A stretch of DNA of 56,925 nucleotides, counting the filler, from Hydrolagus affinis (lineage: Eukaryota), in assembly GCA_012026655.1 (NCBI GenBank). It is 4 parts of 4 records of this genome, joined end to end, with 100 filler letters (N's around TTAATTAATTAA, not from the genome) between each part and the next. Parts side by side here need not be neighbours in the genome. Positions count along the whole stretch, not along the records: positions 42,998 to 56,925 come from JAAILG010019882.1; 3 more parts are not named here. One strand, given 5' to 3'. This document shows positions 42,998 through 56,925 of this stretch, in pieces (positions within the stretch are counted from its first letter, which is position 1; each line of letters begins with the position of its first letter). The notes beneath the pieces are model-generated. The model was not told the origin of the DNA, did no database searches, and saw nothing but the letters and a program-made list of their open reading frames with translations. Made by a program: the position numbers and the translations under genes.

Positions 42998-43068
42998 CCT
43001 TCCTCCCTCCCTCGCTCGCTCGCTCACTCGCTCACTCACTCACACACACTCACACACTCACACACACA
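42998..43068 (+). repeat. Compound microsatellite (CCCT/CGCT/CACT/CA)
   Basis: Directly visible at the gap edge. Confidence 0.9.
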
Positions 43069-43248
43069 CTGTTGTTGAAGTCATCGAACATGAACAGAGC
43101 AACAACGTCCTGACCACAAGTTCACAGGGATGGATTGTGTCATGAAGCAATGCTTTTCTGTCATGGAAGTGATGCTGAAACACCTCGTCGCCGACAAAAA
43201 ATTTGTATAATGAACTCAGGTGCAAAGCTAGTCTCCTGAGGAGCGACA

Positions 43249-44158
43249 ATGGGACTGTTCATCACTTCGCTTCTCTTATTGAGCTTTATATCAGGTGAGG
43301 CTGTGTACCATACAATACATATGATATGTATGCAAGTATTGCCTGTTTCTTCTGAAGATGATTGAATGTTCTGGCATCAATAATAATCATAAACCTTCCA
43401 TTTGATATTGCGATTTTCACGTTTTATCAACTTCTCATAGCGCTTCACAGCATATCAAGTGAATTGACTGTACATTTATGGGCGAAACATGGCAGCCAAT
43501 TGCGCACAGCAGCGTCCCCAGAAACAGTCGTGGATTGAAATGATCAATTTTATAATTGTGCTATTTTTGGAGGATTTATATTTTGTGCCCAGTATCCCAA
43601 AAGCAGAAATGGATTGAGCGAGCACTTCCGTAATTTTAGATTGCTACTGTCTCCACAAAGGCGATCCGGCAATGAACAAACGATTGGTACCTCCTTATTC
43701 CTCAGTTAACTCGTATGTATGTGATGACCATGTTAACTAACTGAATGGTTTGTCCTATCCCTTAACCTTCTCATGTCTGAGCTTAGTGGTCTATCAGTAC
43801 AAGAATTGCACAATGTTTGACGCTGATCCTTTTATTTGTTTGCTGATGTGCTGCTGGAAGATTCAATCAGACAGCAGTTACCCAGGCTGAGCAAACAAGA
43901 GGGAGACACGGCGAGTCTTAGCTGCTCATATACCACCAGCTCGCCCTTTGCCGCTCTGTACTGGTACAGGCATTACCCAGGACACCCTCCCCAATACATT
44001 CTATACAGAGATATTTATGAAGGTAGCTACTCTGCAGATTTTGCAAAAGGACATTTTTCTTCACAGCTTGACAAGAGTCAGAAACAAACCACATTAAGCA
44101 TAACCAGCCTCATTATCACAGACGCTGCCACATATTGTTGTGGTTTAAGAACAAGTAG
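43249..44158 (+). CDS. V segment V12, open frame but canonical acceptor mutated (leader 43249-43294, V exon 43846-44158)
   Basis: Leader MGLFITSLLLLSFIS/GTGAG; expected AG reads TG at 43844-43845; SLSC, YWYRHYP, DAATYCCGLR. Confidence 0.8.
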
Positions 44159-44197
44159 CACAGTGCTGCAAGTCAACGCCTTGCCTGTAGAAAAACC
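44159..44197 (+). other. 23-RSS of V12
   Basis: CACAGTG, 23 bp, AGAAAAACC. Confidence 0.88.
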
Positions 44198-46788
44198 TAG
44201 TCAATATTAACGCTCAATGAATCCAGAAACAATGGTCAATTTCAGTCAACCTCAGATTTATGCTTAGAACATTCGCCTCGGAAGCGAGAATACCCTGCTT
44301 TGATTACTAGCAGGGTAAAGTTTTGAGCAAGTATCCGTCATTCAAGCAGTACTAACTAGCAATAAGATGGACAACATTTGTTAGTTGATAATTGCTTATC
44401 GAGTGATTAATATTCGTGGATGAAAAATGTTAGTCCCTCAATCCAACACTGCTTGTGGGACTCTGTTGTTTGCAATTGTCTGTCGTGTTTCCTGCACAAC
44501 CGACAAATTGGTCAAGTTACTTACTGCAAACACACACACGCGTGACAATAATCCGTCCAAAGCAAACCACAATAACAAAAATTGTTCATTTCAATCCACG
44601 ACCGTTTGTGGGACGCTGCTGTGTGCAACTGGCTGCCACGTTTTGTCCACAAATATACAGTCTATTCATTTTACTGTGTATTCGGTGAAACGCTTTGAGA
44701 TGTCGATAATATGTGTAAAGCGTATGAAATGCAAGCACTATTTTTAGTTTTATTATTAATGGTCAGTCAACTTAATTTTTCAGTGCATTTTATGATGCCC
44801 CTTGATAAGTCACGAAGATGTGATAAGTCACTTTATGAAATGCAAGTATTATTGCAATTATTAATATTATTATTGACAGCATTAGTGCTAATGTTATTGT
44901 TAATATCATTGTTATTCTACTTCTAAGTATTATTTGTGTTGCTGTAACTATCGTTATTACTGTTGCAAATATTGTCAAGATCTGTCAGACAACAAGACTG
45001 TACAGAAATTCCGGTAATGTGTGAAATGTTTCAATTCAGCACAAATATTACTCCTGCCATTGACTTACTTGACAAATTGTGACATTGATGCCGTGGCTCT
45101 GAGAAGAATCAAGCGACTATTTTCCAAACACAAGCATAAATTCGTCCAGTGGTTCGTGTACGGAAAGTGTGAAAGAAATACTGGTAATAATCCTTATCAT
45201 TGATAAAGCACCTCATGACATTTTCGAGATTCTCAAAGCGTCTCCCGTGATATACCTTTGGCCCGTGCCCTCTACCATTCCAAACTTCATGACCCCATCA
45301 CCCCCATCCTCGCCCAGCATCCGGAGGATCTAATTCAAGTAGTGCAAGGTTTCTTTGAACAGGTTGAGTGTTGTACATCATGTCGTGCTTAATTATTAAA
45401 ACGCCTGCTTTGGAAATGGCTCATGTTAGGATTTTGGATGATCCATTTGTTTGTTTCTTATATTGTATTGTATTTGTTCATTCTTTTCTGCCTGTTTGAT
45501 AAGCGAAAATACATGTCGTTGGTGAGAAACCTGGCAGTATTGGCACTTATTATCTATTTGTTTGAACCAAGAAACCCAGTCAAAATCAATAACAACAACT
45601 TGGATTTATATAGCGCCTTCCATGCCTGACGGCGTCTCGGAACGCTTTAAAGTCATCAAACTGCAATACTTCTTCAAACCATTGGTGTAGAAAAGAGTTC
45701 TTGCAACTAAGTCAGCCTTTTAGTTATAATCTGTAAATGACAAATATTGACATTTCAGTTCTGCTGCCAAAGAAATTGTGATAATCTTGTCATAGCCTAT
45801 TTCTCACGTATTCAATCCACTTTGTTTGTGGGACAGTGCTGTGCACAATAGGCTGGTGCGTTTCGCCCCTCAAAAAACAATAAATTGGATAAATTCACTT
45901 TAACGTATTGAGACACCGTCTGGTGTGGTGGGCGCTATTTAAATCGAAGTTGTGGCTGTTGTGGTTGTTATTGTGTTAAGTGCTTTCAGAAAATTAGAAG
46001 ACGTGAAAAGCGCTATATCAAGTATTAGGATTGTTACTTTGCCTACCCATAAAAATATAAAAATCCAGTCAAGAAACTTTGATTACCAACAGTTTTTACA
46101 AATTTTAATTTTTCATAATTTAACCCTAATATTTTTGAACGTTGTTCTCATGTATCCATATATCCTGTAAAAAAAATGTTTTAACATTCATTTGTCCATA
46201 ATGTAGTCGCTTGTAACTCGGTAGTTAGACTAATCAGCTTGCCTGTGAGAGACTTGATTTGATCTGTAGGCAGGGCGCAACTTTGTAAAAATGTCCTTAC
46301 TTGACTGGCCTGATAATAATCCCATGACAAAACGATGTTACATTATTGATTGCATTCCACAGTTATTTGAAGGACTCTACCCTTTGCAATTGACTGCCAT
46401 ATGTTGCCCATAAAGTAACAGTTAGTTCAGTTTGTGGCATATTCTTATTAAGGCTTGGGAACGTCTACATGATGAGAAAAGCGCTATATCAAATTCAAGG
46501 ACTATTAAATGCATTAGTTTGTATGATGTATCGACATGATCATTGGAAATGTGAAGAAACACAGTGACTCTGGCATTTGTCTCTGGTATCAATTTCCTTG
46601 ATTTAACTTGATGCCTTTATAAAGATTTTATCCCAGAATGAGCCCCAATTTCTCTTCAGTACACAACATTGGTAAGCCTGGTTTAACAGGACTGCGCGAT
46701 GTATTTTAGGCCTTGTCTCTATGTTTCACATTTGGTCTCTATAAAACAGGCCTTGCTGTTTCTCTGCATAATAAGCCTGGTGACTGTA

Positions 46789-46916
46789 TTAACATTTTGT
46801 TCTCCATATAATAGATGAGTGCACTGTATAGGCGCCCATGTCTGTGTATATGTGGCCTTGCCTCGGCTTCTGGAAGGCTCCGCCCTCAGAGTCGTCATTG
46901 TCTTCCTGCAGCTGAT
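46789..46916 (-). CDS. Paralogous copy of the SRCR-receptor cytoplasmic exon, ending in a stop (alternative last exon or remnant)
   Basis: TTAACAG acceptor; DQLQEDNDDSEGGAFQKPRQG matches exon 50432-50575 (DQFQEEYDDSESGALQQPRQG), then diverges to TAA. Confidence 0.5.
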
Positions 46917-49461
46917 CTGTTAACAGTGAGACAATAATTCATGTTTCAATATTTCGATAGGAAAGTAGGCAGCAGATATATTATAATCGCATAATTCTGG
47001 ACCTCCTTCTTCTGTGTGAGAGCAGATGAATTTCCTCAGATAGGATGTGCTACAATAGTGAACCCATTGATCAGCGATCCGAAGGCCTAGCTACCTGGTG
47101 TGAAAACATCTTCCAGAATATGATTAGTTCTGTCTGCTCAAGTGAATATCAGAAGGAAATGTTTCTGGAAGAAGCACAAATTAACGAGTAAAGATAAGTA
47201 CATATACAACACTTGATCTTAATGATTTTGGTAATATTATATGCCTGTGTACTCTCCAACTCATTAATTGACTTCTCAGTTGACATGTAATTAGACTTGG
47301 TCCTATCACAGTTTCCAGTCTGTTTCTCTATGGGTGAAACGGACTTGAGATTAGGGTCACTGCCAGGTTGGCAGCTATATGGTGAAATGGGCAAATGGTT
47401 GTACACAGCAATTTATTCATTGTATTGAACAGCTTCTTGGAACTAGTTGAGTGTTGTGCTTAATTTGACGCCTAATTTTCAATACTTGTTTACAATTCTG
47501 AGTATTATCTGAGTAGTATCTGGCAGGGTGACTAATTTGAGCCTATATTCTCTCGAATATAGAAGAATTGGAGGGGATCCTATGGTAACGTATAAGATTA
47601 TTAAACTGCACGACAAAGTAGGTAGTGGGAGATTGTTTCCCCTAGTAGGAGAAATTAACACTAGGGTTCACAGTCTTCAAGTCAGGGGTCAGCCCTTTGC
47701 ACCATGTTGAGAAAAATGCAATGTATGTGATTGTGTTACATTTGCTGTTGAAGGTAGCAGAAATGTCAAGGTGGAAAGTTAGAAGGTGGGTACCCTGTTT
47801 GCAAATGAACTGGACGCTAAGAAACTCAGGGAATGTGAAATCATGAAACTGCTGGGGGGTTTTCAGAGCAATGCATTCACGGACGGATGTATAATAATTA
47901 ACCTGACATAATTCGTTTGTTAAGTTTGTGCAAATGGAAAGAATACACCACAATTGGAAGTATTATTGACCATTTCATATTTATTGAAGTCGATTTGTGT
48001 ATCAATCATGACTTACAATGTGATTGTAAATTCGATAAAATGTCAAAAGTAGAAAGCTCCCTGCCAAGGCATGGTGGGTGTTGTCACCAACATTAGTACA
48101 CTTTACTTTTGTTTACTCAGCGATAGTGTAGCACTATCAGTATATGGAAGTCAAAGAGTAAAAACTAAAAATTCTGGTTCCGATTATTAATTATATTTAA
48201 ATTGTGTCCAATGAAAACAATTACGAATTACTCTCTTTAGCAGAGAATCAAATTCGATTCTCGAGATTCTACAATGAATGTGAGCAAACATGCTTAAAAC
48301 GCTGCTATTTTTATCACAACAACTGTTTTAAAAAGACGATTAAAGAAAATCCGAACGATTCCCACACTTCTTTATAGAAAAGTATCCTCAGTCAAATAAA
48401 GACTAAATGTGAAGGATGAAATCATGAAAAAATTCAGTACTACATGATAACATTAAAACGTGAGTCAAACTACTGCAATGTCTAAAGTACACAATGTATT
48501 CACCATGAAATATGTGAATCGTGGAAGCATGATATGCAGAGAGCATAAAGGAAAACTATTATGGAAAAATTTTACATTGTTGCATATTAATTGTGCTATA
48601 ATTTTATGGAACAACTATACCACCCTTCTGCACCGATTTTCCATTCGAGGAGCATCAGAAATCAGAAGGGACCAAATTACATCTGAACGGCTCTCTAAAT
48701 CAGGCAAAAAAATCAAAGTCATTTAAAGTAAAGAAGATTATTTTCATCAAACAGCATTACATTGCTCCCTCTTTTGACGTTTAAATGTACAGCATGTTGT
48801 ATCCGACACTATCTGTGGCCGTGAGTTGTGTTCAATCATTACGTACTGATAGAATATGTATTTCATATGGTGGCTATAATATTTCCAGCAGTTGCGTCGA
48901 TGTTCTCAATGGAAAACGCAATTTTCACGCTCACTTTGCAGCTAATATCTCAATACTAAATAAGTTTTTTGGTTCAGGAAAATAAAATAGAATATTCTGC
49001 GGAAGAAGGTCGAAACATTGATCACTGAGTCAATAAAAAACGGCGAAAACAGATTCGAATGGTAACAAATAAATGCAATGCCACATCTACCCGTTGTGGG
49101 ATTTTGTGAAGGAATTTTTAATTTGAAGTCTAACACCGATTATTGTAATCCTCAGTAAGGCAGCTATACATGCTTATTGCTCTGCAGTATGAACGGTATA
49201 TGGCGTGCAGTACTGCCGATCAGCCTGAAGTCAGGATTGTCTTTGATTATAATCACTGACTGTGTTCGTCAGGGTGTATAACCTCTGATATCAGCCCTCG
49301 CTGAGCACAACTCTAATTAAAATAGATCCGTCACTATGGTGATTGACTAATGCCAGGAATTTGGTGCGGTGGGTGTGTTGGTCGGGGGGTGGTTCTGTGG
49401 TGTGAAATAATCAGTGACTTATCAAGTCCTAAACTACCTGTTTTTGATCTGGATGTTAATC

Positions 49462-49604
49462 TCAAACGGAGCAGATCTGAGGAGATTCCCTCTGATTCCC
49501 ATTCGGAAGCTGCTCGGTGTCAGGGTCACAGTCAACGTCATCATAATTACACTGAATGACTTCGTCAGGAACCAGAAGGTCACTGACTGTGTGACATCTG
49601 CCAC
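49462..49604 (-). CDS. SRCR receptor terminal cytoplasmic exon
   Basis: CTCTGCAG acceptor, phase 1, GGRCHTVSDLLVPDEVIQCNYDDVDCDPDTEQ...ICSV-TGA. Confidence 0.68.
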
Positions 49605-50431
49605 CTGCAGAGCCAACCATCATTCATTCGTAATTGCACTGATCTCAGAGTCCATGTGTGTGTGTGTGTGTGTGTGGGAGTGTATCTGTGTATGAATATC
49701 TATGAGTCTGTGCGTGTGGTTGATCATATATTTGCATGTCTGACAAATGCAGAGTGCACAGCTAACCGATGCATATTTGTGATTTTCTTCCACCCCAACA
49801 CTCCAAGCTGAATTCGAAAAGCACATGTAAGACGGAAATCCACCTCACTTGTTTGATAAATTGGTAAATATTTAGATTTTACCAAATAGTTTTACAAATA
49901 TTCAATATACTCGTGTAAATGGCTATTTTCTTCATTTTACCTTCGTTGGTATTATCAAAGAGATAGCAGCAAGGACAGCTGTGCTAATCGGTGCCTCCCA
50001 GCACCACTCCGTATGTGTCTTTATTGACACTACACACAGCCTCGGAGACACATTTAACAACAGAGAAATACAGCGTCAGATTGCTCATCGACTTGTTTAA
50101 CTAAAAGCACATTTTATTCAATTATGTCAACCTGTTGATCAGTCTCCAATCACACGTGATCTTGCTGTCTCTCGCCTGCTTGTATGCGTCATGCAGCAAA
50201 GCCATGCATCAGCAGCTATACTGCTGCCAAGCACCCAGTGCTGGCAAATATGCACTGGCCTTGAAAGTATACAGTCATTACATGCGACAGTGTACCTGAT
50301 GATATCCTAATCAACAAGAGGTCTTTATGAAACTTAAACTGTATATAATTGTTATTACTATTATTCCTCCCTATTTGTGGCTGATCAAATATCTCCCGCA
50401 TTATGATGAAACATGACATTTAGTTTGTTAC

Positions 50432-50575
50432 CTTGTTGGAGTGAAGTTTCCCGGTCATTGTGGGTGGTCAATGTGGGGACATAATCAGGTGTGTCAGTGA
50501 CCAGGGGGAGGAGGCCTTGTCTCGGCTGCTGGAGGGCTCCACTCTCAGAGTCATCATACTCCTCTTGAAATTGAT
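50432..50575 (-). CDS. SRCR receptor cytoplasmic exon 3
   Basis: AACAG/GTAAC, phase 1-1, 144 nt, EEYDDSE motif. Confidence 0.72.
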
Positions 50576-51433
50576 CTGTTAACATTGAAACAGTATCATA
50601 TGTTACAATACAGTATTAAGATAAAATAAAGTAGAATGAAGCATATATTTTATAATCTTAGAAGTATACAATACAGGATGAGGCCATTGCGTCCATTGCG
50701 TTTGTACTGGCACTTTTAATGAGCTGTCCCAAATTCAACTCAAATGCAAGCACTCTCCCACACACAGCCCTACTACTCTATCTTTCCCAATTGTCTATGT
50801 ATATGTGCAAGGAAATTCGGACACCATGGTGCTCAGTGTATTTTATTTCAGCAGAAATACTGAAAGGGTATTGACTGTTACTTGGGATAACTAACTGCAG
50901 TTTAAAACTTGATTTACGTTCACATCCTGGTTTAATGGAAAGTTTTCTAGCCCCTAACTCAGAAGGGTATGAGTGTAGCATTCACAGCGACTGTAAGGAT
51001 TATGTCATCACCTGATAATGACATCACCTGAGACGCCGTCTGGCGTGGAGGCCAATATATCAATCGGAGTTGTTGTTGTTGTTGTTGTTATCACCTGATA
51101 ACCTGTCTTGGGCATTGACGGCATATTGTGTAACCCTAACAGGGACAGTAAGCTCACAATCTGACTGGCACCCATTGTAGTGTTTGCATGCTCAAGTCGA
51201 CTTTAGATATCGCGTTTATCTCAATGTCCTCTCTTTCAATCCCCTCCATCCCGGATAAACTGCTTGATTTTACTTCAGGACTGTGCACATTGTGTTGCTA
51301 ATTTGCCTGTCCAGTTCGCCAACAATCACAGTAACTACAGTTCACTATAATAATCCGTGAAGCTTGGATGTGCTTTGAAATGTTGAAGGGATCAGAGGCT
51401 GAATCAAGTACAGCAATTGCTTCATGCACTCAC

Positions 51434-51544
51434 CATCGACAATGGGTAGAAACACTTTGTCATTTCCAAGTTCTGGATCAGACCCATTCACACTGTCCCC
51501 AGTGTAGTACGCCAGTTTATTGATAGAATCACTGGATTCTGAAA
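51434..51544 (-). CDS. SRCR receptor cytoplasmic exon 2
   Basis: GCTCAG/GTGAGT, phase 1-1, 111 nt, VSESSDSINKLAYYTGDS. Confidence 0.72.
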
Positions 51545-52282
51545 CTGAGCAAAATAAAACCATTGCTTACATAGGTAGACAAATTATCATTCAACTCCAA
51601 TGTCAGAACACGGAAAGTTACCAATAAATCCAAATTTATTTTTGATGGGTATATGCAGAAGCAATATTCATCTTACACCTAAATTGAGAGGCAGGCTAAA
51701 TTTTTCACGAAATGGATTATAAATTATAATTTATTAATTATTAATGGATTATTATTTTTTGCAGAATGATTCCATTGCAAAAGCAACAACAGCAACAAAA
51801 AAAATAGATTTTCGAGCCCTTTTGATGTTGGGAGAACACCGCAAGGCGCGGAGCATTCAGGAAGGACCCGAGCAATGTAGATGTGCAGGACAGGAGGCAG
51901 GGACGTACGAGAGTTAGGAGGGGAGGGAGTGAGTTAGCGGGGTAGGCATGGATTTAGGAGGGGAGGAATAAGTAGGAGGGAGGAATCGTTGGGAGGGGAG
52001 GTAGAAAGTTAGGTGTCGAGGGAGATATTTAGGGTGGAAAGTGAGAGTTTGGAGAGGAGTGAGGTGTAGGTAGGGAGTTAGTAGGGGTGGAAGATTTAGA
52101 AGGCAACCAAAGAATTAGGAGTGCAGTGAGAGAGTTACGAGGGGAGGGAGAGAGGTAAGAGTTTGTTGAGAGAGTTAGGAGTAGAGAGAGCTATAGTAGC
52201 GGAGGGAGAGAGTAAGGATGGGAGGTAGAGGTAGGAGGGGAGGGAGATAGGTATAGAACCAACATGAATATAATGTACATAC

Positions 52283-52378
52283 CGAAGGATCCAGCACCAA
52301 GTGATCTTCTTCTGATTGGCAAATCCTCAATTTCATCATAAATTGCTTGATAGAAACGAACGGAGGGATATTCTTCCT
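52283..52378 (-). CDS. SRCR receptor cytoplasmic exon 1
   Basis: CATCAG/GTATGT, phase 1-1, 96 nt, FYQAIYDEIED motif like WC1/CD163L1 tails. Confidence 0.8.
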
Positions 52379-53066
52379 CTGATGGAAGTTTACATGCACA
52401 CATTACAATAATATCCTGACGTTGCACAATTCATCTTGAAATTTAGGTATTAATAAATCTGGATTATGTAAAGCGGGTTTTCGTAGTTGGAACAAAAATG
52501 TATTTCATGATCACTATAGCCTCTTTGTGTATCTTTGTATCAGTGTCCATATTTTTGTGTGTAATCGATTAAATCTTTATATATGACTTTTCGACTGCAA
52601 GGATGGGTATGTACTATTTCACTTTCATATACAGTACATTCACTTTACAGCATATGCTTTGAGGCGCTTTGATACATTTAGAACATTTGAAAAGCACTAT
52701 ATCATATGGAAGGTTTACTCACTTCCCTGTATATTGTTACCTATGTCTGTGTATTCCTGAGTATAAAGTATGTCAATGTGATTAGTTTACATTTGCAAAT
52801 ATTTGTGTATTTGTGCACTTACGCTTCTGTAGTTCACTGTTCGCTGATTATATCTTTATGTCTATATCTATACTTTCCCTTAGTGTATCTTTATAAATGC
52901 ACGTGCACCTAACAGAATGAAATAAAGACACTAACAACAGATCAATGTGTTATATTAATGAACGACATAATTGGAAGAGTGGGTTAACAATCAGTTTATC
53001 TGAAATTTTCTGAATTGTTAAATAAAAAGTTAACCACAGTGCTATGTAACCAGACTCCACGCTCAC

Positions 53067-53174
53067 CTCTTCCCGGAGAATTGCTGTCCATCTCTACCAT
53101 CAGTGCAAACAGCACTGTTGCTAACAGGAACACAAGCACGATACAGGTAATCACCGGGATGTTGATCAGATGGG
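53067..53174 (-). CDS. SRCR receptor transmembrane exon
   Basis: GCAAAG/GTGAGC, phase 1-1, IPVITCIVLVFLLATVLFALMV. Confidence 0.82.
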
Positions 53175-53199
53175 CTTTGCAAATCAAAGACACAACATT

Positions 53200-53441
53200 A
53201 GTGACATCACCGCTCTCAGTGACATCATCACCAGCTATGACATCACCGCTCTCAGTGACATCACCGCTCTCAGTGACATCACCGCTCTCAGTGACCTCAC
53301 CACTCACAGTGACATCACCGCTCTCAGTGACATCACCACTCTCAGTGACATCACCGCTCTCACTGACATCACCGCTCTCAGTGACATCACCGCTCTCAGT
53401 TACATCACCACTCTCAGTGACATCACCACCAGTTGTGACAT
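53200..53441 (+). repeat. 18-bp minisatellite, ~13 copies of AGTGACATCACCGCTCTC
   Basis: Units counted directly, most identical or with 1-2 changes. Confidence 0.95.
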
Positions 53442-54027
53442 AATAATATTCAAACACGATACAGGTGATCAATGGGATGTTGATCAGATGGAATTTGCAA
53501 ATCAAAGACACAACATTAGTCTATTTTTGTTGGATATGATTCAGTTCTCAGAATTTCGAAATTTTATTTAAAATTTCTTGAATCAAACACTTCTCACTAT
53601 GTTGTCTCGGGTAAGGTGTTATACAGTTCATGGCACATTAGACAGTGTAATCAGTGGAATGCCAACAACAGCTTTACAGATGTGCATATGAAACTATTTT
53701 CTTGATTTAAACAGCCACCTCGTTCTAAATGAAAGATAAATTCTGACAAGTTATCTTTCAAATAATATGGCTTTCACTATATTGTATCAAAATTGAAATT
53801 GCAGTGATAATCTCTTCGAAGTTTAGCACATATTATCAAGAAGACAATTAATTATGTTAATTACCTAAAGGTGTGGGACGGCTTGTTGCTTTGCGAAGTG
53901 CAGAACCTGCAACATAATGCAGACAAATTTAATCTAGCATTAATTCTATTTTTGTCTTTAAGTTATCCCAGAAGTTAGCTGAATTTGTCAACGAAAATAG
54001 TAAACTATTCGGAGAGCAGTTCCCTAC

Positions 54028-54339
54028 CAGAACAAACTACACCGGCGTCTTCCCTGTGACTACAGTCAGTTTTATCCACGGCTGAAGAGACACAATCCCA
54101 CAGGAAGGATTCGCTTCCTCTGCAGTGAAGCTGGTGTGGCCATAGCTGACCAGTGCCTTGTCCAAACCCCGCCTGTCCCACAGCCCGCACGGCGGTGCCG
54201 CAGCCCAGCTGTCTGCACACCATACTGGCCTCTCGTATATCCCAGGAGTCGTCACAAACCGTTCCCCACGTCTTGTTGCTGAATATCTCAACTCGTCCAG
54301 AGCAAGCAGTGCTTCCACCAACCAATCGCAACTTCTGTC
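54028..54339 (-). CDS. SRCR group B domain exon (membrane-proximal), CD163L1/WC1/SCART-like receptor
   Basis: LRLVGGSTACSGRVEI..WGTVCDDSWD..VCRQLGCG..CSHREDAGVVCS; phase 1-1. Confidence 0.93.
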
Positions 54340-54792
54340 CTGAATAGCAAACATTCAAATCACACATGTTAATAATTAATAAAGTAAGCCTTGCATTTGA
54401 TATCGCGCTTTTCAGGTCTTCTAGATGTCTCGAGACGTCTCAGTTACTCAGATACATAAAATTCAAATGATACTTGTTACTGTCAAATACATATGTCCTA
54501 TACATTACTACTACCACTTTATAGTAGATAATCTGAATTGCGTTGAGTAATCCTACAGATGTGAGTGAATTCACATGAAATGCATGCTTTGTTGATTCGT
54601 TTCATTTTTAATTCAGTACCTGCTAAATGATGGGCCTGATCGTGTGAGCGTCCTTCGCACTGTTTCGAAGATACCGATTTTTTCGTTGCTTTCCCTGCGT
54701 TAAATATACATTTATAAGTGAAATGCTTATGATGAAATATCATCACAATAGTTATAATCGAAGAAATGTTTACTGCATCAAAGTATTATTAC

Positions 54793-55107
54793 CTGTACAA
54801 ATTACACCCACATCTTCCAAATGACGACATTCATGTTCACCCCAAGGTATTGAGGAACATTGCCACAGGAATGACTCCTTTGAATTGCAATCTATGTCAT
54901 CCAGCCAAATAGTTCCAGAACCTATCCCAAATTTACCACGATAATCGACACTGATTACTTGGCCACAACCTAACTGTCTGCAGATGACCTCAGCGGCTTT
55001 GTTTCCCATGAAGTCCAAGCAGACTGTGCCCCAGGTTCCATTGTAAAACACTTCAACTCTCCCCTCACAGGAATGTTGACTATTCACCAGGCGCACCTGC
55101 CTGTGCC
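54793..55107 (-). CDS. SRCR group B domain exon
   Basis: VRLVNSQHSCEGRVEV..WGTVC..CRHLEDVGVICT; phase 1-1. Confidence 0.93.
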
Positions 55108-55369
55108 CTGAGAAGCAACAGTGACAGAGTTCATTAAGACAGGCGGCAATATATAGTCATTTGGATTCTCCAGCGTTACCGTCATCTATCATGTAATATG
55201 ATCAGTTATTGACCACCTCGGCAGCATCCCCTGCTGCATTAGCTCATCGACATTTACAATGACTATCCCATGTGCGGAGATCAACCTATAATCTTGTGAA
55301 TCGATAGTGCCAAACAGACACCGTATCAGTACATCGTGATGGTGCAACAAGCGATATTCAATCTCTTAC

Positions 55370-55681
55370 CTTTACACACGATGGTAACATCTTCTTTGTG
55401 GTAACAGTCATGCTGCCCCCATGGAGACGAAGCACATTCCCAGAGAGCTGACTCGTTTCCTGAACATTTCACCTCATCCAACCAAATTGGCTCTGAGGCC
55501 TTCCTGCAAGGGGCCGCAGCTGCTACAGTGACTGCGGTTCCACACCCCAGCTGTTTACACACAACATCCGCCTCTAGTGATCCCCAGGAGTCATCACACA
55601 CCGTCCCCCAGGATCCATTGTAGTAAATCTCCACTCTCCCAGCACACGAACTCTCACCATCGATCAGTCTGATCTTTGCAG
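55370..55681 (-). CDS. SRCR group B domain exon
   Basis: IRLIDGESSCAGRVEI..WGTVCDDSW..CYHKEDVTIVCK; phase 1-1. Confidence 0.92.
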
Positions 55682-56362
55682 CTTCGTTTGAACACGAACA
55701 GAGATTAATTTAAGATAAAGCATAAAACATTTTACAAACTTTAATAGAATTATTAACTGGAGGTAGGAAAGATTATCAGAGAGTGTAATCATTTCAGATC
55801 ATCACTCGTCTGCCCAATCTACTTCATTCAAATAGTGCTGAATATTACGCTATGATCGCCGTCAATCTCACAAGATGCACAAATGCTCTTCATATGATAA
55901 ACTTTATGTAAACTTATTGTAGCATTTGTGTGCGAAATATGGCAGCTAATTGCACAAACAATCCTGCACTGAGTAGCAAATATATTATTTTATTTATTTG
56001 GGGGAACTATTACACCCAAAATGTGATCCACTAATCGAGTAACAACGAGCTACTAGTTAAATCTAACCCTGAAATTTCAATTATTGTTAAATATTCACTT
56101 ACCTGAAGATTCACTTATATTCCCAGTTGATTGGATTTGCCAATGCTGTTTGTTACCTGTTCCAATATAAAACGAAACGCCAGCTTACACTTGGGGATTT
56201 TTCTTTGTATTTTGATGACATTCACCATCCAAAAAATAAATATTACTCAACGTACCGGTCTTCGCTGCATCGATGATGTGGCAGCCATTCAGAGGCAGGA
56301 AGGCATATTATTAGATATTTCATTGCGTGATATTAACATATTTATCATTAAAATGCTCTCAC

Positions 56363-56677
56363 CTGAACAATGAACACGCACATCAGTGCTGCTATTGGAC
56401 GATGGAGCCACTGTGGAATGTGGGCAGTTCCAGATGTGTGTCTCATTTCCCAAACACTGAACATTACTGATCCACACAGGTCCAGAGACTTCCCCATAAT
56501 GGGAAGAGTTGTTGGCTGAAATCACTGACCCACAGTTCAGCTGTCGACAGATGACATCGGCATCTAATACGTCCCAGGAATCATCCAGCAATCTGCCCCA
56601 GGTACCATCGTAATAAATCTCCACTCTCCCATCACAGCGGCTGCCTCCGTTCTCTAACCGCAAATGCCACTGTTTAC
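56363..56677 (-). CDS. SRCR domain exon with 6 Cys (lacks C2 and C7); gene continues beyond the window
   Basis: LRLENGGSRCDGRVEI..WGRLLDDSWD..DVRVHCS; TGCAG/GTGAG, phase 1-1. Confidence 0.92.
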
Positions 56678-56925
56678 CTGCAATGATTTAAATTGACAAT
56701 TATTCAATCAAAAGTGGGAGAGATGAATATAATGTAATTGCAGAATTCCTATTCAACAATTGACAGTTCCAATGTGACAATATGAGTTCATGATACAGAA
56801 AGCTCGTCTATCAAATAGAAAGTACCAGCAACCTTTCACAGATTGTGATGTTTGTAGTAATCAAACCTACAGATTTACATCATTAACTAAGAAAATGACA
56901 GATTACTGCCTGATAACCAAGCACA

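What the first reader, a model, noticed from the sequence alone, without database searches (positions are those of the whole stretch)
49462..56677. WC1/CD163L1/SCART-like SRCR receptor adjacent to TCR V segments
Seen: four SRCR exons, a TM exon and four tail exons with YDEI, YDDS and YDDV motifs, ending ~5 kb from V12 on the same contig and convergent with it. Established: WC1 (ruminants) and SCART (mouse) are SRCR co-receptors of gamma-delta T cells with similar tyrosine motifs. Inference: tight linkage of such a gene to TCRalpha/delta V genes in a cartilaginous fish would suggest an ancient receptor/co-receptor neighbourhood together with the VJ-C1 gene.
Basis: partly seen in the sequence, partly recalled or inferred. 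Interest (0 to 1): 0.7.

Follow-up and report, generated by a model that had tools for sequence, protein, structure and literature searches.

The report
WC1-like SRCR receptor gene beside a TCR-type V segment
A cartilaginous-fish contig carries most of a gene for a membrane receptor built like the WC1/SCART/CD163 immune receptors of mammals and birds, lying 5 kb from a T-cell-receptor-type V gene segment; the gene is real, but its T-cell role and any ancient linkage to the receptor genes are untested.

Summary
On the minus strand, 56677-49462, eleven exons with AG/GT borders, all phase 1, give an open 656-aa partial protein. It has four SRCR domains, a 25-aa interdomain exon, a 14-aa stalk exon, one transmembrane exon and four cytoplasmic exons. 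The 5' end runs off the contig, so four SRCR domains is a minimum.

The tail is acidic, with eight tyrosines including YDEI, YDDS and YDDV. A germline V segment (leader, V exon, 7-23-9 RSS) lies 5.26 kb away, convergent.

The architecture fits the CD163 family and, in tail exon count, WC1 rather than CD163A or SCART. It does not fit DMBT1 or CD5/CD6. The last SRCR best matches the membrane-proximal domain of M160, WC1.1, bovine CD163 and SCART1 (53-58%), but DMBT1 domains reach 53-56%.

DNA runs of the same species hold many 80-95% similar copies, which suggests a multigene family.

Not shown: T-cell expression (no RNA run was listed), tail homology to WC1/SCART, or conserved linkage to TCR genes. 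Five bony-vertebrate loci holding V homologues have no SRCR within 10 kb. I file it as a new member of a known kind, of moderate interest.

The parts
56363..56677 (-). SRCR exon A. It is the first visible exon and starts in phase 1. It has 6 cysteines; C2 and C7 are absent.
   Evidence: Pfam SRCR 2e-27. AG/GT borders. Cysteine count.
55370..55681 (-). SRCR exon B, with 8 canonical cysteines plus one extra.
   Evidence: Pfam SRCR 7.5e-30. Splice model. Cysteine count.
54793..55107 (-). SRCR exon C, with 8 cysteines. Its best matches are d-type domains of CD163, M160 and WC1.1.
   Evidence: Pfam SRCR 3.1e-31. Foldseek against AFDB Swiss-Prot.
54620..54694 (-).
   Evidence: AG/GT borders, phase 1-1, keeps the frame. 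WC1 and CD163 genes have such ID exons (PMC2681482, PMC2906472).
54028..54339 (-). SRCR exon D, membrane-proximal (d'-like), with 8 cysteines.
   Evidence: Pfam SRCR 4.3e-32. Its best Foldseek hits are the last SRCR of M160, WC1.1, bovine CD163 and SCART1, at 53-58% identity.
53865..53906 (-).
   Evidence: AG/GT borders, phase 1-1.
53067..53174 (-). Transmembrane exon, including the first 9-13 cytoplasmic residues.
   Evidence: The only hydrophobic segment, Kyte-Doolittle 3.0 over 19 aa. Splice model.
52283..52378 (-). Cytoplasmic exon 1, carrying three tyrosines including YDEI.
   Evidence: Splice model. Motif enrichment.
51434..51544 (-). Cytoplasmic exon 2, carrying a YY pair in AYYTGD.
   Evidence: Splice model. 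Tyrosine list.
50432..50575 (-). Cytoplasmic exon 3, carrying YDDS and DYVP.
   Evidence: Splice model. Motif enrichment.
49462..49604 (-). Cytoplasmic exon 4, carrying YDDV and the stop codon at 49464-49462.
   Evidence: Splice model. Translation.
43249..43294 (+). Leader exon of the V gene segment.
   Evidence: ATG, a hydrophobic leader, and a GT donor in phase 1.
43861..44158 (+). V exon of a germline V gene segment. Its relatives are TCR alpha/delta-like.
   Evidence: Pfam V-set 3.7e-15. Best relatives are Callorhinchus milii V fragments at 67-72%. Gar and turtle homologues end in YLCALR. The best single-domain PDB hits are human Vdelta1 and TCR alpha.
44159..44197 (+). Recombination signal sequence: heptamer CACAGTG, 23-bp spacer, nonamer AGAAAAACC.
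   Evidence: Read directly from the sequence.

Best explanation
This is the 3' part (at least 656 codons) of an intact-looking gene for a type I transmembrane group B SRCR receptor of the CD163 family. Its exon layout is that of WC1: tandem one-exon SRCR domains, an interdomain hinge exon before the membrane-proximal d'-like domain, a separate TM exon, and a cytoplasmic tail in four further exons.

Shown here: the exon structure, the domains, the single TM, an acidic 173-aa tail (net charge -25) with eight tyrosines, and signs that the gene is one of many recent paralogues in this species.

Inferred: the ectodomain binds microbial or self ligands, as other group B SRCR receptors do. On clustering with an antigen receptor, Src-family kinases phosphorylate the tail tyrosines. 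YDEI resembles the WC1/SCART Y-(Q/E)-(D/C/E)-(I/L) motif and the pYEEI type of SH2 ligand. YDDV resembles the pYDDV type of docking site. The phosphotyrosines would then recruit SH2 proteins, so the receptor would act as a hybrid pattern-recognition and co-stimulatory receptor on lymphocytes, as WC1 does.

The neighbouring V segment is a functional-looking germline V of TCR alpha/delta type. The 5.3-kb tail-to-tail adjacency is most likely a local feature of this genome, not proof of an ancient receptor/co-receptor neighbourhood.

My odds:
- Structural identity as a CD163-family, WC1-like receptor gene: about 0.85.
- Lymphocyte co-receptor function: about 0.45-0.5.
- Evolutionarily conserved linkage to TCR V genes: about 0.1.
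For: - Gene model: eleven AG/GT, phase-1 exons give one open frame to a stop. Four Pfam SRCR matches at 1e-27 to 1e-32. Cysteine counts of 6, 9, 8 and 8 are typical of group B. One TM segment.
- Architecture matches published WC1 genes: one exon per SRCR, ID exons, a TM exon, and a tail in 4-6 exons (PMC2681482, PMC3511184). [quoted passage not shown]
- SRCR D best matches the last, membrane-proximal domain of human M160 (58%), bovine WC1.1 (58%), bovine CD163 (55%) and human SCART1 (53%).
- SRCR C best matches d-type domains: CD163 717-818, M160 1034-1135 and WC1.1 374-475.
- Three of the four Y[DE][DE][ILVS] motifs in all six frames of the piece lie in the modelled tail.
- WC1 and CD163c-alpha-like tails share a Y-(Q/E)-(D/C/E)-(I/L) motif, and its phosphorylation is needed for co-stimulation (PMC2906472).
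- Multi-copy evidence: in four DNA runs, contigs with 0-2 differences lie at depth about 3, while 5-12 distinct contigs per variant site at 80-95% likeness cover both exons and introns.
- No CUB, ZP or other Pfam domain in intronic or intergenic ORFs.
- A CD163-like SRCR gene marks a T-cell subset in Atlantic cod (PMC9276791).
Against: - No expression data: no RNA run was listed.
- A tail exon found no true relative among 1.84 billion representatives. The single hit is a bacterial HEAT-repeat artefact. The last-exon ORF found nothing either. Homology of the tail to WC1/SCART is therefore not shown.
- YDEI departs from the published motif at position +1.
- SRCR identities to DMBT1 (49-56%) are within a few points of those to CD163-family domains.
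- PDB searches place all four domains best on CD163 SRCR7, which does not discriminate.
- Domain C looks d-type rather than e-type, so the canonical e-ID-d' order is not reproduced.
- The N-terminal domains that define WC1 (a) or SCART (m, l, n) are off the contig.
- The multi-copy reading rests on summed contig depths, which the tool warns are not copy numbers.
Confidence: 0.55

Rival explanations
1. The gene is the same CD163-family receptor, but it works as a myeloid or broadly expressed scavenger and pattern-recognition receptor (CD163A or M160-like), not as a T-cell co-receptor. Its position next to a V segment is coincidental.
For: SRCR D and C match CD163 (M130) and M160 domains as well as they match WC1. 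No expression evidence ties the gene to T cells. I recall, without checking here, that unrelated genes lie inside mammalian TCR V regions. V homologues in five bony-vertebrate loci have no SRCR neighbour.
Against: CD163A and CD163b tails share no significant identity with WC1/SCART-type tails, and the CD163A cytoplasmic domain is coded by two exons and carries YREM (PMC2906472). Here the tail is long, in four exons, acidic and rich in Y-D-D/E motifs. The family appears to be multi-copy, as WC1/SCART-like genes are in cattle, chicken and platypus (PMC2906472).
Confidence: 0.3
2. It is a DMBT1, SSC5D or SSC4D-type secreted mucosal SRCR protein, and the TM and tail exons are mispredictions.
For: Single DMBT1 SRCR domains score as high as CD163 domains: 111-117 bits in the PDB and 49-56% identity in AFDB. 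Short database fragments most similar to SRCR D are mostly auto-named DMBT1.
Against: There are no SID exons between SRCR A, B and C, and no CUB or ZP domain anywhere in the gene region. A strong TM segment follows the last SRCR in frame through canonical phase-1 splice sites. Three Y-acidic motifs fall exactly in the predicted tail exons and frames.
Confidence: 0.05
3. The copy on this contig is a non-functional member (pseudogene or gene fragment) of a multi-copy family, or the V-SRCR adjacency is an assembly artefact of a short, repeat-rich contig.
For: The contig is only 14 kb and ends inside the gene. The region has many 80-95% similar copies, and same-species contigs matching it exactly are only 200-500 bp long, so long-range continuity was not verified independently. 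This copy carries a private 18-bp minisatellite and a 70-nt duplication just upstream of the TM exon, both absent from other copies.
Against: No stop, frameshift or broken splice site in any of the 11 visible exons. No N in the piece. The minisatellite is intronic and leaves the acceptor of the TM exon intact.
Confidence: 0.1

Closest known systems
[quoted passage not shown]
   Same: - Group B SRCR domains, one exon each.
- An interdomain exon, a separate TM exon, and a tail in four further exons, as in WC1 type I.
- The membrane-proximal domain is 58% identical to WC1.1 domain 11.
- A tyrosine motif of the Y-x-(D/E)-(I/L) kind in the first tail exon.
- Apparent multi-copy family.
   Different: - The diagnostic N-terminal 'a' domain cannot be seen.
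- The domain before the hinge looks d-type, not e-type.
- The motif is YDEI, not Y-(Q/E)-x-(I/L).
- Tail homology and gamma-delta T-cell expression are not shown.
- WC1 genes are not next to TCR V genes in cattle; they lie on chromosome 5 with CD163 (PMC2681482).
SCART1/SCART2 (CD163c-alpha), markers of mouse gamma-delta T cells
   Same: A transmembrane CD163-family receptor with an ID exon and a d'-like last domain. Identity to the last domain of human SCART1 is 53%. It has a tyrosine motif shared with WC1.
   Different: The CD163c-alpha cytoplasmic domain is coded by two exons, one shared with the TM (PMC2906472). Here there are four exons after the TM exon. The diagnostic m, l and n domains are not testable.
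CD163A (M130) and CD163b (M160/CD163L1), macrophage scavenger receptors
   Same: SRCR domains are 50-58% identical. D best matches the last domain of M160 and of bovine CD163, and C best matches CD163 SRCR7 and M160 SRCR10. An ID linker and a single TM are present.
   Different: Their tails are unrelated to WC1/SCART tails, and CD163A carries YREM (PMC2906472). This tail is long and acidic with YDEI, YDDS and YDDV, and has no YREM.
DMBT1 (gp340, SALSA)
   Same: Individual SRCR domains are as similar as CD163-family domains, at 49-56% identity.
   Different: There are no SID exons between the SRCR domains and no CUB or ZP domains, and a TM plus a signalling-type tail is present.
CD5 and CD6 (group B SRCR regulators of T-cell receptor signalling)
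   Same: A type I SRCR receptor with a long, multi-exon, tyrosine-bearing tail.
   Different: CD5 and CD6 have three SRCR domains; this gene has at least four. The per-domain PDB score is lower for CD6 (about 61 bits) than for CD163 (about 87 bits).

Membership tests
Group B SRCR superfamily | SRCR domains of about 100-110 aa | tested here: met
   Four Pfam PF00530 matches, E-values 2e-27 to 4e-32. AlphaFold models of C and D have pLDDT 90-91 and TM 0.93-0.94 to known SRCR domains.
Group B SRCR superfamily | Each SRCR domain coded by a single exon, with 6-8 cysteines | tested here: met
   One exon per domain, all phase 1. Cysteine counts are 6, 9 (8 plus 1 extra), 8 and 8. Domain A lacks the C2-C7 pair, as some family members do (PMC2906472).
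CD163 family (CD163A, CD163b, CD163c-alpha/SCART, WC1) | Tandem group B SRCR domains followed by a single TM and a cytoplasmic tail | tested here: met
   Splice model and hydropathy.
CD163 family (CD163A, CD163b, CD163c-alpha/SCART, WC1) | A separate exon coding interdomain (ID) sequence | tested here: met
   A 75-bp exon at 54694-54620 between SRCR C and D. ID exons are described for WC1, CD163A and CD163c-alpha (PMC2906472, PMC2681482).
CD163 family (CD163A, CD163b, CD163c-alpha/SCART, WC1) | Membrane-proximal d' SRCR domain | tested here: met
   D best aligns to the last SRCR of M160 [1245-1346 of 1453], WC1.1 [1154-1255 of 1436], bovine CD163 [921-1023 of 1129] and SCART1 [785-886 of 1027]. 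The margin over DMBT1 is small.
CD163 family (CD163A, CD163b, CD163c-alpha/SCART, WC1) | An e-type SRCR domain before d' | tested here: not met
   C best aligns to d-type positions: CD163 SRCR7, M160 1034-1135 and WC1.1 374-475. Some published members also lack e, for example platypus a-c-d-d' (PMC2906472).
CD163 family (CD163A, CD163b, CD163c-alpha/SCART, WC1) | SRCR domains group with family domain types in a phylogeny, apart from DMBT1, SSC5D and the like | tested here: inconclusive
   No full-length named reference sequences could be fetched, so no tree was built. Best-hit identities are 50-58% for the CD163 family and 49-56% for DMBT1. PDB searches did not discriminate.
WC1 | N-terminal 'a' SRCR domain | not testable with these tools
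   The 5' end of the gene lies beyond the contig edge. The first visible exon starts in phase 1, 248 bp from the end.
WC1 | Separate TM exon and a tail coded by four or more further exons | tested here: met
   A TM exon plus four cytoplasmic exons, compared with PMC2681482 and PMC3511184.
WC1 | Y-(Q/E)-(D/C/E)-(I/L) motif in the membrane-proximal tail | tested here: inconclusive
   YDEI is present in the first tail exon, but position +1 is D, which is not in the published consensus (PMC2906472).
WC1 | Sequence homology of the tail to WC1 or SCART tails | tested here: inconclusive
   Reference tails were not available to the tools. Tail exon 3 found only a spurious bacterial hit in 1.84 billion representatives. 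The last-exon ORF found nothing.
WC1 | Multigene family | tested here: met
   Four DNA runs of the species hold 5-12 distinct contigs per site at 80-95% likeness over exons and introns, beside exact contigs at depth about 3. Caveat: summed depth is not a copy number, and it is not shown that the other copies are complete.
WC1 | Expression on gamma-delta T cells | not testable with these tools
   No RNA run was listed for this sequence.
SCART / CD163c-alpha | [quoted passage not shown] | tested here: not met
   Four exons follow the TM exon, against PMC2906472.
SCART / CD163c-alpha | Diagnostic m, l and n SRCR domains | not testable with these tools
   The N-terminal part is missing and no reference domain set was available.
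CD163A (M130) | A two-exon cytoplasmic domain carrying the YREM motif, with no significant identity to WC1/SCART-type tails | tested here: not met
   The tail is 173 aa in four exons after the TM exon and has no YREM.
DMBT1 | SID exons between SRCR domains, and CUB and ZP domains | tested here: not met
   SRCR A, B and C abut directly. No CUB or ZP domain in any ORF of the gene region.
CD5 / CD6 | Exactly three SRCR domains | tested here: not met
   At least four SRCR exons.
Germline TCR V gene segment | Leader exon, V-set exon with conserved Cys/Trp/Cys, and a 3' RSS | tested here: met
   The RSS is 7-23-9. No J or C exon lies within the 5 kb downstream.
Germline TCR V gene segment | Belongs to the alpha/delta locus | tested here: inconclusive
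   The best single-V PDB hits are human Vdelta1 and TCR alpha. Gar and turtle homologues end in YLCALR and sit in V clusters. The gar homologue's best PDB hit is a TCR alpha V. No C gene or locus marker was seen.

The most novel reading that the evidence does not exclude
In cartilaginous fishes a multigene family of WC1/SCART-like SRCR receptors is embedded in, or duplicated together with, the V region of the TCR alpha/delta locus. If so, antigen receptor and SRCR co-receptor genes formed one neighbourhood early in jawed-vertebrate evolution and were separated later in bony vertebrates.
Probability: 0.1. Interest if true: 0.75.

Novelty: new member of a known kind. Interest (0 to 1): 0.4.

Why it matters
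Published work traces WC1/SCART-like genes to birds and monotremes (PMC2906472), and a CD163-like gene marks a T-cell subset in cod (PMC9276791). My searches of the held library found no description of such genes in cartilaginous fishes.

A WC1-type gene layout in a chondrichthyan, apparently multi-copy and with a multi-exon Y-acidic tail, would place this receptor type at the base of jawed vertebrates. It would also give a concrete candidate marker or co-receptor for shark and chimaera T-cell subsets.

The claimed significance of the V-gene adjacency is the more exciting part. It rests on a single 14-kb contig and is currently unsupported.

Tried and rejected
1. RNA evidence. The look-up of sequencing runs listed no RNA run, only six DNA runs holding 6-7% of the sampled words. 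Splicing and expression could not be checked.
2. Tail homology. A phmmer search of tail exon 3 against 1.84 billion representatives gave one hit, a bacterial NACHT/HEAT-repeat protein matched 15 times, which is spurious. The last-exon ORF shared no words with anything in the 5.8-billion collection. The ESM Atlas returned only unrelated bacterial clusters below 0.9.
3. Full-length homologues. They could not be reached. The length filter of the search for homologous proteins limits single-exon queries to fragments, so the SRCR D query returned mostly bird fragments auto-named DMBT1, plus two Callorhinchus milii fragments at 67-74%. I therefore did not build a named SRCR-domain phylogeny.
4. Domain typing by PDB. 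All four domains hit human CD163 SRCR7 best, which is not informative.
5. Synteny in C. milii. The Ensembl/UniRef fragments are not in the contig index.
6. Synteny through V homologues. Two turtle haplotype assemblies, gar, bowfin and sturgeon show only V-set neighbours, and tblastn finds no SRCR or tail within 10 kb on either side. This is a weak test, with one V per species.
7. Minisatellite as coding sequence. I considered whether the open 171-aa frame through the GDVTES minisatellite is coding. I rejected this because no acceptor in phase 1 precedes it and other copies lack it.
8. Ig light-chain cluster. I considered and rejected V-J-C organisation, because no C-domain or other Pfam hit lies in the 5 kb downstream of the V.
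10. From memory only, and not usable as evidence: bovine WC1 tails contain YDDA/YDDV-like and YTGD motifs. The only check I could make is that the published 3' primer for WC1-11 back-translates to ...DVELSTM-stop (PMC3511184).

Full report
**What is in the sequence**

The piece (42998-56925, no N) holds two features.

On the minus strand, four ORFs match Pfam SRCR with E-values from 2e-27 to 4e-32. I read the strand directly and built a splice model. It has eleven exons, every one bounded by AG and GT and every intron in phase 1. Together they give one open frame of 656 codons that ends at the stop at 49464-49462.

| Exon | Coordinates | Note |
|---|---|---|
| SRCR A | 56677-56363 | first visible exon |
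| SRCR B | 55681-55370 | |
| SRCR C | 55107-54793 | |
| Interdomain | 54694-54620 | 25 aa |
| SRCR D | 54339-54028 | |
| Stalk | 53906-53865 | 14 aa |
| TM | 53174-53067 | |
| Cytoplasmic 1 | 52378-52283 | YDEI |
| Cytoplasmic 2 | 51544-51434 | |
| Cytoplasmic 3 | 50575-50432 | YDDS |
| Cytoplasmic 4 | 49604-49462 | YDDV, stop |

The first visible exon begins in phase 1 only 248 bp from the contig end. The signal peptide and any further N-terminal SRCR domains are therefore missing, and four SRCR domains is a minimum.

**Is it more than chance?**

- The hydropathy maximum, 3.0 over 19 residues, falls in the predicted TM exon. The next best segment anywhere scores 1.2.
- The tail is 173 aa with net charge -25 and eight tyrosines.
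- The motif Y[DE][DE][ILVS] occurs four times in all six reading frames of the piece (27,852 codons). Three of those are in the modelled tail, in the modelled frames.
- Cysteine counts of the four domains are 6, 9, 8 and 8. Domain A lacks the C2-C7 pair, a variation described for this family (PMC2906472).
- No other Pfam domain, and in particular no CUB or ZP, is found in intronic ORFs.

**The V segment**

On the plus strand there is:
- a leader exon at 43249-43294;
- a V exon at 43861-44158 (Pfam V-set 3.7e-15);
- an RSS at 44159-44197 made of CACAGTG, a 23-bp spacer and AGAAAAACC.

It is convergent with the SRCR gene, with 5,264 bp between the RSS and the stop codon. The first minus-strand AATAAA after the stop is at 47985-47980. 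No J, C or other domain is detectable in the interval, so this is not a shark-type V-J-C cluster.

Its nearest relatives are unnamed Callorhinchus milii V fragments at 67-72%. More distant homologues in gar and turtles end in YLCALR and lie among other V genes. The best single-domain PDB hits are human Vdelta1 and TCR alpha chains. An alpha/delta assignment is thus plausible but not proven.

**What kind of SRCR gene?**

By architecture it fits the CD163 family and, within that family, WC1.
- Published WC1 genes have one exon per SRCR domain, separate interdomain exons, a separate TM exon and a tail coded by four (type I) to six exons (PMC2681482; PMC3511184).
- DMBT1-type architecture is absent. 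I recall, without checking here, that this means spacer exons between all SRCR domains plus CUB and ZP domains.
- CD5 and CD6 have three SRCR domains.

I modelled SRCR D and C with AlphaFold (pLDDT 90 and 91) and searched the Swiss-Prot AlphaFold library.
- D aligns best to the last, membrane-proximal SRCR of human M160 (1245-1346 of 1453, 58%), bovine WC1.1 (1154-1255 of 1436, 58%), bovine CD163 (921-1023 of 1129, 55%) and human SCART1 (785-886 of 1027, 53%). It therefore behaves as a d' domain.
- C aligns best to d-type positions: CD163 717-818, M160 1034-1135 and WC1.1 374-475, at 50-54%. The canonical e-ID-d' order is therefore not reproduced.
- DMBT1 domains reach 49-56% in the same searches. 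PDB sequence searches put all four domains on CD163 SRCR7.

SRCR sequence alone therefore does not decide the family. The architecture does.

**The tail**

WC1 and CD163c-alpha-like tails from mammals, platypus and chicken share a Y-(Q/E)-(D/C/E)-(I/L) motif, and its phosphorylation is needed for WC1 co-stimulation (PMC2906472). The first tail exon here carries YDEI, a near match with D at +1. YDDS and YDDV follow in exons 3 and 4.

I recall, without checking here, that pYEEI-type sites are ligands of Src-family SH2 domains and that pYDDV sites are docking sites in T-cell adaptor proteins.

Direct homology of the tail to WC1/SCART could not be tested because no reference tails were available to the tools. 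A search of 1.84 billion representatives with tail exon 3 returned only a spurious bacterial repeat protein. The last-exon ORF found nothing.

**A family, not a single gene**

Four DNA runs that hold this sequence were laid on 49300-55200.
- A few contigs match with 0-2 differences at depth about 3, so the runs are of the same species.
- At every variant site, 5-12 distinct contigs at 80-95% likeness cover exons and introns alike, with summed depths of roughly 10-290 outside two high-copy intronic repeats.
- Three runs carry a junction, 53175 to 53494, that removes the 18-bp minisatellite and the 70-nt duplicate lying in the intron before the TM exon. That insertion is therefore private to this copy.

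With the tool's caveat that summed depth is not copy number, this points to a recently expanded multigene family. That is the state reported for WC1/SCART-like genes in cattle, chicken and platypus (PMC2906472).

**Function**

The structure is shown. The function is inferred by analogy: a type I receptor whose SRCR ectodomain binds ligands and whose tail tyrosines are phosphorylated and recruit SH2 proteins, acting as a hybrid pattern-recognition and co-stimulatory receptor.

The cell type is unknown because no RNA run was listed. A CD163-like gene marks a T-cell subset in cod (PMC9276791), so lymphocyte expression of such genes in fishes has precedent. I put lymphocyte co-receptor function at about 0.45-0.5, and a myeloid or broad scavenger role at about 0.3.

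**The linkage claim**

The adjacency is real on this contig, but it is a single observation on 14 kb of a repeat-rich region.
- The C. milii fragments could not be placed on contigs.
- Five loci holding V homologues (two turtle haplotype assemblies, gar, bowfin and sturgeon) contain only V-set genes. They have no SRCR or tail exons within 10 kb by tblastn.
- Bovine WC1 and CD163 lie in their own loci on chromosome 5 (PMC2681482).

An ancient receptor/co-receptor neighbourhood is therefore not supported at present. I give it about 0.1.

**Novelty and verdict**

My searches of the held library found no description of WC1/SCART-like genes in cartilaginous fishes. Automated genome annotations probably already label such genes, though I did not check this. 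I file the gene as a new member of a known kind. Interest is 0.4.

Noticed in passing
window 53133-53520: An 18-bp minisatellite (12.7 copies, 53200-53427) is flanked by a 70-nt direct duplication (53133-53202 and 53451-53520, 91% identical) that includes the 5' part of the TM exon and its acceptor. The upstream copy has lost the AG. An open 171-aa frame runs through the repeats (GDVTES units), but no phase-compatible acceptor precedes it. Other copies of the gene in three DNA runs lack the whole 318-bp insertion.
   Followed up: yes
window 52452-52845 and 54225-54618: Two intronic stretches reach summed contig depths of thousands to tens of thousands in all four DNA runs. Loose ends at 54385-54431 run into (TAA)n-like tails. 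They are probably interspersed SINE-like repeats of this genome.
   Followed up: partly
window 51900-52250: In the intron after cytoplasmic exon 1, the minus strand is CT-rich low-complexity sequence with degenerate 20-bp repeats. It shows strong GC skew (0.5).
   Followed up: no
window 47528-47710 (+): A 60-aa ORF in the intergenic region looks to me, from memory, like the conserved 3' end of an interspersed retroelement common in cartilaginous-fish genomes. It has no Pfam match.
   Followed up: partly
window 56363-56677 and 55370-55681: SRCR A lacks the C2 and C7 cysteines and carries three N-glycosylation sequons. SRCR B has an extra, ninth cysteine (APCRK) in the loop after the helix.
   Followed up: partly
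window 55107-54793: SRCR C carries GRVEVFYNGTW. I recall that this is close to the bacteria-binding VEVLxxxxW motif of DMBT1. Herzig et al. report that this motif is absent from WC1 and bovine CD163c-alpha.
   Followed up: no
window 43003-43070: The contig starts in a (CTCA)n/(CA)n microsatellite, a likely reason for the assembly break.
   Followed up: no
window 43295-43860: The leader intron of the V segment is 566 bp. This seems long to me for a V gene segment.
   Followed up: no
proteins P0009 and P0015 (Callorhinchus milii): The closest database sequences to both the SRCR D exon (74% and 67%) and the V exon (72%) are unnamed single-exon fragments from the elephant shark. P0015 looks like a hybrid, with an N-terminal half like SRCR B and a C-terminal half like SRCR D. 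This suggests exchange between domains or paralogues.
   Followed up: partly
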